The notes under the pieces are model-generated. The model ran no database searches. It was not told where the DNA came from and saw only the letters and a list, made by a program, of their open reading frames with translations. A DNA stretch of 63,858 bases, the filler included, from Octopus bimaculoides (Eukaryota): NCBI RefSeq assembly GCF_001194135.2. It is 6 parts of 6 records of this genome, joined end to end, with 100 filler letters (N's around TTAATTAATTAA, not from the genome) between each part and the next. Parts side by side here need not be neighbours in the genome. Positions count along the whole stretch, not along the records: positions 26,096 to 44,383 come from NC_068981.1; 5 more parts are not named here. One strand, 5' to 3'. Positions 28,226-28,563 of the stretch are shown in pieces. Position numbers and translations under genes: made by a program. Positions within the stretch are counted from its first letter, which is position 1. Each line of letters opens with the position of its first letter.

Positions 28226-28563
28226 AAATGTGGCTGACCCATAGGGGACGATGCTACTGTTGTTTATAGCCCCAGGAAGACATCTCCTCCAGCTGGTCAA
28301 CGACACACTGTCTGTGTCCGATCAGTATTTGCGAAGGGAGATCATCGTTCCCATTTCTAGCCTGACGTGATACACACGGACCCGGATTTCTGGGTAGTAA
28401 CCCGTCATCAGCGTGTGATCACGTCAGGCTAGACATGGGAACGATGGTTTCCGTTCGCAAATACTGATCGGACACAGACAGTGTGGCGTTAGCCAGCTGG
28501 ACGAGATGTCTTCCTGGGGCTAAAAAGAACAGTAGCATCGTCCCCTATGGGTCAGCCACATTT
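28226..28563. mobile_element. 338-bp fold-back element: ~152-bp inverted arms around a hammerhead core
   Basis: Arms 28226-28378 and 28412-28563 are reverse complements with ~10 mismatches and 1 bulge (aaatgtggctgacccataggggacgatgc... / ...gcatcgtcccctatgggtcagccacattt). Confidence 0.9.
28379..28411 (-). ncRNA. Type I hammerhead ribozyme core at the apex of the fold-back
   Basis: Minus strand: ..CACACG / CUGAUGA / C-GGGU-UACU-ACCC-A / GAAA UCCGG GUC / CGUGUG..; GUC site. Stem I is the arms; C10.1-A11.1 mismatch. Confidence 0.8.

What the first reader, a model, noticed from the sequence alone, without database searches (positions are those of the whole stretch)
28226..28563. Fold-back element whose long inverted arms are stem I of an apical hammerhead ribozyme
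Seen: a 338-bp palindrome with ~152-bp arms (~93% complementary). The 33-nt spacer, read on the minus strand, is an entire hammerhead core: CUGAUGA, stem II GGGU/ACCC, GAAA, near-palindromic stem III AUCCGGGU and a GUC cleavage site, with the arms continuing seamlessly as stem I. Several arm mismatches are transversion-type (G.G, A.A, C.C), as in rod-like viroid or retrozyme RNAs, and not just CpG decay. There is no ORF and no clear TSD (aaa|ttt junction), and the flanks may be two halves of one old LINE. Known: type I HHRs occur in PLEs and retrozymes, while MITEs are palindromic but are not known to me to carry ribozymes. Inference: a non-autonomous mobile RNA (ribozyme-capped hairpin) that opens itself at the apex, possibly providing a 3' end for fold-back priming, circularisation or release of long dsRNA. 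I know of no description of this architecture, but cannot search. The C10.1-A11.1 mismatch may mean this copy is attenuated.
Basis: partly seen in the sequence, partly recalled or inferred. Interest (0 to 1): 0.92.

Follow-up and report, generated by a model that had tools for sequence, protein, structure and literature searches.

The report
Hammerhead ribozyme capping a long inverted repeat
A 344-bp hairpin-shaped insertion in an animal genome has a real but weakened hammerhead self-cutting RNA motif at its tip; it is most likely two inverted copies of a known ribozyme-bearing retroelement end, not a new kind of mobile RNA.

Summary
Positions 28223-28566 form a 344-bp fold-back with 149-nt arms, 93% complementary and free of indels. 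On the minus strand the apex (28411->28379) spells a complete type I hammerhead ribozyme (HHR) core. Its shape matches the canonical metazoan type I HHR: helix I 6 bp, helix II 4 bp, helix III 2 bp plus the palindromic CCGG loop. A random spacer between these arms matches my relaxed HHR descriptor with P~5e-6, so the motif is not chance.

The ribozyme looks weak. It has a C.A mismatch at the base of helix II. It gets no Rfam hammerhead hit even at E<=10. A competing hairpin is 9 kcal/mol more stable.

The element is GC-rich (51% against ~35% in the flanks). It has a probable 8-bp target-site duplication (7/8, P~0.01-0.04). It sits inside an older, 69%-identical inverted repeat. I found no second copy, no tandem array, no flanking reverse-transcriptase domain and no sign of selection for RNA pairing.

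Best reading (0.42): an inverted twin or snap-back retro-insertion of the segment just downstream of an HHR, hinged on helix I. This fits how Penelope-like elements (PLEs) insert. Novelty: a new variant of a known kind. Family-level data are needed.

The parts
28223..28566 (.). Whole fold-back insertion, 344 bp. GC is 51% and CpG o/e 0.8, against 33-37% GC in the flanks.
28223..28371 (.). Left arm, 149 nt. On the minus strand it is the sequence 3' of the HHR cleavage site (helix I 3' strand extended).
28418..28566 (.). Right arm, 149 nt, 93% complementary to the left arm with no indels. On the minus strand it is the extended 5' strand of helix I.
28412..28417 (-). Helix I 5' strand proper (CACACG, positions 2.6-2.1). 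It pairs with 28373-28378.
   Evidence: sequence
28372..28378 (-). Helix I 3' strand (CGUGUG, positions 1.1-1.6 = 28378-28373) plus the bulged U1.7 (28372). The bulge marks the hinge between the 6-bp native helix I and the long arms.
28379..28411 (-). HHR core, 33 nt: CUGAUGA (28411-28405); C10.1 (28404); helix II GGGU-UACU-ACCC (28403-28392); A11.1 (28391); G12 A13 A14 (28390-28388); helix III A15.1-U16.1 and U.G closing CCGG (28387-28380); C17 (28379). Predicted cut at 28379|28378.
   Evidence: No Rfam hit.
28216..28223 (+). Candidate target-site duplication, left copy: TTTGCCAT.
   Evidence: 7/8 match, P 0.012 (shuffled flanks) to 0.038 (random genomic positions)
28568..28575 (+). Candidate target-site duplication, right copy: TTTGGCAT.
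28064..28154 (.). Left arm of an older, outer inverted repeat into whose loop/arm junction the fold-back is inserted.
   Evidence: I2; 69% over 96 columns, E 4e-7; score 26 against 11.6+-1.6, 0 of 500 shuffles
28574..28667 (.). Right arm of the older, outer inverted repeat.

Best explanation
This is a single, decaying retro-insertion derived from a retroelement RNA that carries a hammerhead. The source would be the terminal region of a Penelope-like element (PLE) or a PLE-mobilised non-LTR retrozyme.

The insertion holds two inverted copies of the ~155 nt that lie immediately 3' of the HHR cleavage site. They are joined head-to-head across one copy of the HHR core.

The join sits at helix I for a mechanical reason. 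The cDNA end made from the 5' strand of helix I (CGTGTG-3') is complementary to the cDNA of the 3' strand, 33 nt behind it. Two routes then lead to the same product:
- The first cDNA snaps back and primes its own second strand.
- Two cDNAs primed on opposite strands of the target anneal there. One of them could be a full-length copy of a self-cleaved RNA that begins at position 1.1.

Either route gives arms that prolong helix I, a single-copy HHR loop, identical outer ends, and a duplication of the AT-rich target.

Shown: the anatomy, the compositional distinctness, the HHR architecture and the probable TSD.
Inferred: the RNA origin, the priming route and the PLE enzyme.

If the minus strand is transcribed, the RNA would form a ~155-bp hairpin. 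Its apex could cut itself at C17 only weakly, or as a trans-dimer through the self-complementary AUCCGGGU. [quoted passage not shown]
For: (1) The HHR has the canonical metazoan type I architecture described for retrozyme-type ribozymes: helix I 6 bp, helix II 4 bp, helix III 1-2 bp capped by a 2-4-nt palindromic loop (PMC4209133). Here helix I is exactly 6 bp before the only discontinuity (the U bulge), helix II is GGGU/ACCC, and helix III is 2 bp plus CCGG. A mismatch at the base of helix II has a precedent in the ~60,000-copy axolotl HHR_Amex2 (PMC7229834).
(2) Chance is excluded: P~5e-6.
(3) The arms are 93% complementary with no indel. From my own knowledge, that is much more regular than viroid or HDV-like rods (~70% paired). 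It fits a duplication made in one event and then aged by ~7%.
(4) There is no sign of selection for RNA pairing. 10 of 11 arm mismatches are true mismatches on the HHR strand, and only 1 of 4 transitions gives G.U there. Single arms are not unusually structured (z -1.3 and -1.5).
(5) It looks like a discrete insertion: a GC step from 33-37% to 51% and an 8-bp 7/8 direct repeat at the ends.
(6) Known PLE biology fits. Insertions are usually heavily 5'-truncated and often carry an adjacent inverted 5'-truncated copy (PMC8557442). The purified PLE protein cleaves and extends both DNA strands at AT-rich 5'-ATT-3' sites. It starts reverse transcription internally, about 85-92 nt downstream of the HHR cut site, with the same start sites on both strands (PMC11167929). 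That predicts short units of 'HHR plus ~100-150 nt' with identical outer ends, as seen here (155 nt from the cut site to each end; the putative target TATATTTGCCATTCAAC contains ATT). HHR pairs on opposite strands 100-700 bp apart were reported in Schistosoma (PMC4209133).
Against: - Only one locus is available. No parent element with the arm sequence in single orientation could be retrieved.
- No RT or GIY-YIG ORF lies in the 18-kb piece. The peptides encoded by the arms have no homologue.
- PLE pLTR ribozymes are usually the 'minimal' type (helix II 7-8 bp, helix I 4-5 bp, no helix III). This one is the canonical type associated with tandem retrozymes, yet there is no tandem array here.
- A junction at helix I is built into any type I HHR. 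It therefore cannot by itself prove that a self-cleaved RNA was the template.
- In vitro, HHR cleavage was not needed for PLE insertion.
- A purely DNA-level inverted duplication would look the same.
Confidence: 0.42

Rival explanations
1. One reading: this is a member of a real family of hairpin- or rod-shaped non-autonomous HHR retroelements, a 'fold-back retrozyme'. The 344-nt palindrome is the functional RNA unit. The HHR opens the apex or, in multimers or circles, processes the RNA. The genomic copy is a one-unit cDNA opened at the distal loop.
For: The unit size of 344 nt lies within the retrozyme range of 170-400 nt, and mussel units are 350-390 nt. Retrozyme RNAs are 'highly self-paired' (PMC7229834). 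The HHR is of the canonical retrozyme type. In an RNA with one type I HHR, the rest of the molecule must emerge from helix I. Solo monomers of retrozymes exist (bioRxiv 10.64898/2026.07.22.740005). The TSD fits retroposition.
Against: There is no tandem repeat and no second copy. The arms are too regular for an evolving RNA rod: no bulges or indels in 149 bp. Mismatches do not favour G.U on the HHR strand. A single HHR at a hairpin apex cannot excise a unit-length RNA. The ribozyme is attenuated and is outcompeted by a hairpin 9 kcal/mol more stable. GC of 51% exceeds the <50% reported for animal retrozymes.
Confidence: 0.2
2. This is a palindromic DNA transposon derivative (a MITE or foldback element). 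Its loop happens to contain, or has captured, an HHR-bearing fragment. The ribozyme is a passenger.
For: The element is an inverted repeat along its whole length, is small and has no ORF. It has an 8-bp candidate TSD, the length hAT elements make. It sits inside another, older inverted repeat, as nested MITEs often do.
Against: By chance an HHR in the loop has P~5e-6. A captured HHR would not be expected to have its helix I run seamlessly into the TIRs. The termini (CTAAATG... / CTCAAAATG...) do not resemble the hAT YARNG ends (my own knowledge). The TSD is imperfect and only marginally significant. No other copies were found.
Confidence: 0.15
3. This is a local DNA-level inverted duplication, for example fork stalling with template switching or hairpin-mediated repair. 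It acted on a pre-existing solo HHR repeat and is unrelated to reverse transcription.
For: The product looks the same: perfect arms at birth, a unique centre and short homology (6 bp) at the hinge. The region is extremely rich in microsatellites and other repeats that promote replication errors.
Against: Both outer ends coincide within 1-2 nt and are flanked by a probable TSD. The whole 344 bp, not just half of it, is compositionally foreign to the flanks. That argues both arms arrived together.
Confidence: 0.15
4. There is no ribozyme relationship at all. The apex is just an imperfect continuation of the palindrome that resembles the HHR consensus.
For: No Rfam hammerhead hit at E<=10. The apex is itself partly self-complementary, and the MFE fold is an extended hairpin. 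The 10.1-11.1 pair is broken.
Against: All 11 core nucleotides, A15.1-U16.1, H17 and three helices of canonical lengths are present. P~5e-6 per spacer, and 0.013 hits expected per 18 kb.
Confidence: 0.05

Closest known systems
Canonical metazoan type I hammerhead ribozymes of non-LTR retrozymes (Cervera & de la Pena 2020, PMC7229834; descriptor in PMC4209133)
   Same: The core nucleotides match. Helix I is 6 bp, helix II 4 bp, and helix III 2 bp with a palindromic tetraloop. AUCCGGGU is self-complementary, which permits dimeric ribozymes. The unit size (344 nt) is within 170-400 nt. The RNA is highly self-paired and there is no ORF. A base-of-helix-II mismatch also occurs in axolotl HHR_Amex2.
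   Different: There is no tandem array, only one HHR in a solo unit. The arms are a near-perfect 149-bp inverted repeat rather than an irregular rod. Loop 1 is reduced to a single bulged U, so loop 1/loop 2 tertiary contacts are unlikely. GC is 51%. Rfam does not detect it.
Penelope-like element insertions with pseudo-LTR hammerheads and adjacent inverted 5'-truncated copies (PMC8557442; PMC11167929; PMC4209133)
   Same: An HHR lies close to the 3' end of the insertion unit. Severe 5' truncation is common. Inverted-repeat insertion structures occur. Both target strands are cleaved and extended from the same internal RT start site ~100 nt downstream of the HHR. Targets are AT-rich, and HHRs on opposite strands a few hundred bp apart have been reported.
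   Different: No RT/GIY-YIG ORF and no pLTR lie nearby. The PLE ribozymes described are mostly minimal (long helix II, no helix III). A junction placed exactly on helix I, so that the arms extend it, has not been described in the papers I could read.
Palindromic MITEs / foldback DNA elements
   Same: Small size, non-coding, inverted repeat along the whole length, possible 8-bp TSD, nested in another inverted repeat.
   Different: The loop is a complete ribozyme core whose helix I is continuous with the arms. The termini are not typical of hAT. Copy number is unknown.
Hairpin-primed second-strand cDNA synthesis and L1-type twin priming (established mechanisms; my own knowledge)
   Same: Both give inverted duplications with a short homology at the hinge, and the TSDs flank the whole structure.
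   Different: Here the hinge homology is supplied by a ribozyme helix, and both arms end at the same element position. No poly(A) is present.

Membership tests
Hammerhead ribozyme, type I | Conserved core C3 U4 G5 A6 N7 G8 A9 / G12 A13 A14 / A15.1-U16.1 / H17 (not G) | tested here: met
   CUGAUGA at 28411-28405, GAA at 28390-28388, A15.1 at 28387 pairing with U16.1 at 28380, C17 at 28379.
Hammerhead ribozyme, type I | Three helices around the core, with helix I open (5' and 3' ends in helix I) | tested here: met
   Helix I is 6 bp and continues into the arms. Helix II is 4 bp plus a 4-nt loop. Helix III is 2 bp plus a 4-nt loop.
Hammerhead ribozyme, type I | Base pair 10.1-11.1 (normally G-C) closing helix II on the core | tested here: not met
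   C10.1 (28404) opposes A11.1 (28391). One plus-strand C-to-T change in a CpG (28391-28392) would explain it. A base-of-helix mismatch is known in HHR_Amex2.
Hammerhead ribozyme, type I | Score above threshold with the curated covariance model (Rfam hammerhead families) | tested here: not met
   No hammerhead family was reported even at E<=10 on 391 nt and on 59 nt.
Hammerhead ribozyme, type I | Site-specific self-cleavage 3' of H17 | not testable with these tools
   Needs in vitro transcription. Thermodynamics are unfavourable for the monomer: HHR fold -39.4 against -48.3 kcal/mol for the competing hairpin.
Metazoan non-LTR retrozyme | Type I HHR in every unit of a tandem array of 150-450-bp repeats | tested here: not met
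   TRF finds no array at or near the element. blastn finds a single copy in 18 kb.
Metazoan non-LTR retrozyme | Unit of 170-400 nt with no ORF, whose RNA is highly self-paired | tested here: met
   344 nt; -282 kcal/mol, z -28; longest internal open frame 54 codons.
Metazoan non-LTR retrozyme | Multi-copy family expressed as circular RNA | not testable with these tools
   The source genome and transcriptome are not available. No copy appears in the collections that could be scanned.
Penelope-like element (autonomous) | ORF with a telomerase-like RT and a GIY-YIG endonuclease, flanked by pLTRs | tested here: not met
   No Pfam RT or GIY-YIG domain in ten ORFs selected from the >=70-aa list of the piece (the non-repetitive ones, including the ORF that overlaps the left arm and flank). 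There are no direct repeats of the element.
PLE-type inverted twin insertion (structure only) | Two 5'-truncated copies in inverted orientation sharing the same 3' end, with an HHR near the 3' terminus and an AT-rich target | tested here: inconclusive
   The geometry fits (PMC8557442, PMC11167929). The parent element could not be identified.
MITE / foldback DNA transposon | Conserved terminal inverted repeats with a TSD of fixed, superfamily-specific length, in many copies | tested here: inconclusive
   The inverted repeat is present. The 8-bp TSD candidate is 7/8, P 0.01-0.04. Copy number is untestable.

The most novel reading that the evidence does not exclude
This is one copy of an undescribed class of 'fold-back retrozymes'. 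These would be hairpin-shaped, PLE-dependent mobile RNAs in which a canonical type I hammerhead caps a ~150-bp duplex. Self-cleavage at the apex would either create the 3'/5' ends used for hairpin-primed reverse transcription or release long dsRNA. A milder version is also possible: the locus is a fossil showing that hammerhead-cleaved RNAs, with their 5' end at position 1.1, are reverse-transcribed in vivo. That would bear on the unresolved role of hammerheads in PLE and retrozyme mobilisation.
Probability: 0.15. Interest if true: 0.75.

Novelty: new variant of a known kind. Interest (0 to 1): 0.42.

Why it matters
Hammerheads are abundant in animal genomes, in Penelope-like elements and in retrozymes. 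What they do during mobilisation is unresolved. In vitro the PLE ribozyme is dispensable for insertion, and no RNA ends at the cut site were seen (PMC11167929).

An inverted junction hinged exactly on helix I could be a by-product of reverse transcription through, or up to, a hammerhead. If it recurs genome-wide, such junctions would give a cheap, sequence-only readout of whether cleaved RNAs serve as templates. They would also show how PLE enzymes create their characteristic inverted insertions.

If instead the two-armed unit is itself a replicating family, it would be a new retrozyme architecture and a genomic source of long, precisely nicked dsRNA. As a single decayed copy with a weakened ribozyme, this locus alone has no demonstrable function.

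Tried and rejected
- Rfam cmscan on the whole piece, on 391 nt and on 59 nt found no ribozyme family. The many 'miRNA' hits lie on microsatellites and were dismissed.
- Other copies in the 18-kb piece: none.
- Exact-pattern scans: a degenerate HHR-core pattern and an arm 20-mer in JGI metagenomes gave 0 hits. An arm 20-mer in IMG/VR gave 0. Arm 20-mers in GTDB genomes gave 0 hits and 2 hits, and those 2 do not extend beyond the 20-mer, so they are chance.
- A concatenate of all open frames of the element searched against 5.8 billion proteins gave no hit.
- A LINE-like ORF was used to identify the organism. It gave 530 unnamed hits, at best 70% identical. The one locus fetched (L003) is only 67.5% identical in DNA, has no element and no HHR, and so is not the same species.
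- Pfam on ten ORFs, including the one overlapping the left flank, gave nothing, so 'LINE halves' is unsupported.
- tRNA/SINE origin: ARAGORN found nothing.
- Evaluating the trans-dimer energy failed, because that structure is a pseudoknot in the concatenated representation.
- Literature searches for a hammerhead at the apex of a long inverted repeat, or in MITEs, found no such description. A cephalopod-specific search was uninformative, apart from 235 Rfam Hammerhead_1 hits reported in the giant squid genome.
- Assembly artefact was rejected because the arms differ by 7%.

Full report
OBSERVATION

The fold-back is real. The repeat finder reports arms 28223-28371 and 28418-28566, 149 nt, 93% complementary. 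A global alignment of the left half against the reverse complement of the right half shows 11 mismatches and no indel within the arms. Seven mismatches are transversions and four are transitions. Past a single unpaired base (plus coordinate 28372), six more pairs (28373-28378 with 28412-28417) leave a 33-nt centre, 28379-28411. The full-length minus-strand RNA folds to -282 kcal/mol, z = -28.

The element is compositionally foreign. GC is 51% and CpG o/e 0.8, against 33-37% GC in the flanks. The 7% difference between the arms rules out a chimeric-read or assembly artefact.

THE RIBOZYME MOTIF

The centre, read on the minus strand, is CACACG CUGAUGA C GGGU UACU ACCC A GAAA UCCGGG U C | CGUGUG U AUCACG.... 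All conserved hammerhead positions are present: C3-A9, G12-A14, A15.1-U16.1 and C17.

The helix lengths match the published description of canonical metazoan type I hammerheads: helix I 6 bp, helix II 4 bp, helix III 1-2 bp capped by a 2-4-nt palindromic loop (PMC4209133). Here helix I runs exactly 6 bp before the only irregularity, the bulged U1.7. Helix II is GGGU/ACCC. Helix III is A-U and U.G closing CCGG. AUCCGGGU is fully self-complementary if G.U pairs are counted. That is the feature which lets such ribozymes act as dimers.

My relaxed descriptor finds this site and no other in the 18-kb piece, with 0.013 hits expected per shuffled piece. Only 16 of 3,000,000 random 46-nt spacers placed between these arms satisfy it. 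The motif is therefore not a coincidence of a palindrome tip.

WEAKNESSES OF THE RIBOZYME

- Position 10.1/11.1 is a C.A mismatch. It can be explained by one plus-strand C-to-T change in a CpG at 28391-28392. That argument is weakened because none of the 12 shared CpG sites in the arms has decayed.
- Loop 1 is reduced to one bulged base, so the usual loop 1/loop 2 contacts are unlikely.
- The catalytic fold (-39.4 kcal/mol for an 80-nt construct) is 9 kcal/mol less stable than an extended hairpin. That hairpin pairs CGGGUU with AAUCCG and GAU with GUC.
- Rfam 15 reports no hammerhead family, even at E<=10 on 391 nt or 59 nt.
- A base-of-helix-II mismatch is not disqualifying. The ~60,000-copy axolotl HHR_Amex2 has a U.U there and still cleaves, mainly as a dimer (PMC7229834).

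I read this copy as an attenuated hammerhead derived from a functional family.

SURROUNDINGS

First, there is a candidate target-site duplication. TTTGCCAT (28216-28223) and TTTGGCAT (28568-28575) abut the element. A match this good arises in 1.2% of shuffled flanks and 3.8% of random genomic position pairs.

Second, the flanks are not recognisably LINE halves, and Pfam finds nothing there. Instead 28064-28154 and 28574-28667 form an older inverted repeat. It is 69% identical over 96 columns. Its alignment score is 26 against 11.6+-1.6 in 500 dinucleotide shuffles. The fold-back sits at the loop/arm junction of that older hairpin.

Third, the transversion excess (7 of 11) is not statistically unusual; my binomial estimate is P~0.17. 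On the hammerhead strand only one of four transition mismatches yields a G.U, against three of four on the other strand. So nothing suggests selection for an RNA rod in the ribozyme sense. Each arm alone is not unusually structured (z -1.3 and -1.5).

SEARCH FOR RELATIVES

The element is single-copy in the piece and is not tandemly repeated. Exact-pattern scans of JGI metagenomes, IMG/VR and GTDB genomes found nothing except two chance 20-mers in bacterial MAGs, and these do not extend. A concatenate of every open frame of the element found no protein among 5.8 billion.

A LINE-like ORF at the end of the piece has 530 unnamed homologues, at most 70% identical. The one locus I fetched is a different species and has no hammerhead. 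The taxon is unconfirmed, and family-level tests could not be run. This is the main limitation of the report.

WHAT IT MOST LIKELY IS

Two bodies of published work explain most of the anatomy without a new class.

(a) Metazoan non-LTR retrozymes. These are 170-400-nt, ORF-less, highly self-paired RNAs with exactly this hammerhead style. They are probably mobilised by Penelope-like elements (PMC7229834; bioRxiv 10.64898/2026.07.22.740005).

(b) Penelope-like element (PLE) insertions. They are typically heavily 5'-truncated and often carry an adjacent inverted 5'-truncated copy (PMC8557442). A purified PLE protein cleaves and extends both strands of AT-rich targets. It starts reverse transcription at the same internal site on both strands, some 85-92 nt downstream of the hammerhead cut site (PMC11167929). 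That predicts short terminal units of 'hammerhead plus ~100-150 nt', which can be laid down twice in opposite orientation with identical outer ends.

Here each arm runs 155 nt from the cut-site position to an outer end (...GCCACATTT[A/T]GA). The two ends coincide within 1-2 nt. The putative target contains ATT.

The hinge falls on helix I for a simple physical reason. The cDNA of the 5' strand of helix I ends in CGTGTG-3'. That sequence is complementary to the cDNA of the 3' strand, 33 nt behind it. Either the cDNA snaps back and primes its own second strand, or it anneals to the end of a second cDNA made from a self-cleaved RNA that starts at position 1.1. Either route produces arms that prolong helix I, a single-copy ribozyme loop, and a 1-nt slip at the hinge.

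The hammerhead did not evolve a 150-bp stem I. An inverted duplication was nucleated on a 6-bp stem I. I put this at 0.42.

Shown: the anatomy, the composition step and the probable TSD. Inferred: the retro-origin, the enzyme and the priming route.

RIVALS

This remains possible and would be the interesting outcome. The size, the self-pairing and the topology all fit, since a type I hammerhead necessarily has the rest of the RNA emerging from helix I. Against it: the arms are too regular, there is only one hammerhead per unit, there is no array, and the mismatches show no RNA-level selection.
- A palindromic MITE with a passenger ribozyme (0.15). It fits the 8-bp TSD and the nesting. It does not explain the seamless helix I, and a chance origin is excluded.
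- A DNA-level inverted duplication of a solo hammerhead repeat (0.15). It cannot be excluded from one locus. However, both arms appear to have arrived together.
- No ribozyme relationship at all (0.05).

NOVELTY AND VERDICT

Type I hammerheads in invertebrate genomes are ordinary; for example, 235 Rfam hits are reported in the giant squid genome (PMC6962438). What I could not find described is a hammerhead core exactly at the apex of a long near-perfect inverted repeat. The nearest report is hammerhead pairs on opposite strands 100-700 bp apart in Schistosoma.

I classify the finding as a new variant of a known kind, resting on a single decayed locus. Its value is as a lead. A genome-wide census of hammerheads with over-long helix I would show which of three things it is: a one-off, a recurrent by-product that records how hammerhead RNAs are reverse-transcribed, or a family in its own right.

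Interest 0.42. The most novel reading not excluded has probability ~0.15.

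Noticed in passing
window 28064-28154 and 28574-28667: An older inverted repeat brackets the fold-back: 69% identity over 96 columns, z~9 against shuffles. 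The left side has 68 extra nt (28155-28222). It may be an old MITE or an earlier inverted insertion. The new element sits at its loop/arm junction.
   Followed up: partly
window 43994-44383 (+), runs off the piece: A LINE-like ORF of the '...KADVDRLYLPR..GGRGL...' type, seen at the C-terminal side of reverse transcriptases. It has 530 homologues in unnamed eukaryote-like contigs, at best 70% identical. There is no Pfam hit on the fragment itself.
   Followed up: partly
window 39739-39861: A 48-bp tandem repeat, 2.6 copies, 89% matches (unit contains GGAGGATGCTCGTGAAA). Unexplained.
   Followed up: no
window 26096-44383, e.g. 30983-31172, 36773-37245, 40204-40492, 41011-41181: About 100 sub-threshold Rfam 'miRNA/snoRNA' matches all lie on (CA)n, (TA)n, (TATG)n and similar microsatellites. 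They are low-complexity artefacts. The piece is unusually dense in microsatellites, such as (ATT)n at 29304-29761 and (CTAT)n at 30344-30662, and it contains 1185 N in several gaps.
   Followed up: yes
L003 (ENA ERZ25878500, contig ctg54692_102x_l) 2077-6144: The locus fetched through the LINE homologue carries hAT dimerisation-domain and RVT_1 ORFs. It is a TE-rich eukaryotic contig deposited among metagenome assemblies. It is only 67.5% identical to the window in the LINE part, so it comes from a different species.
   Followed up: partly
window 28223-28566, arms: All 12 CpG sites shared by the two arms are intact despite 7% divergence between the arms. This suggests the locus has not undergone methylation-driven CpG decay.
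   Followed up: no
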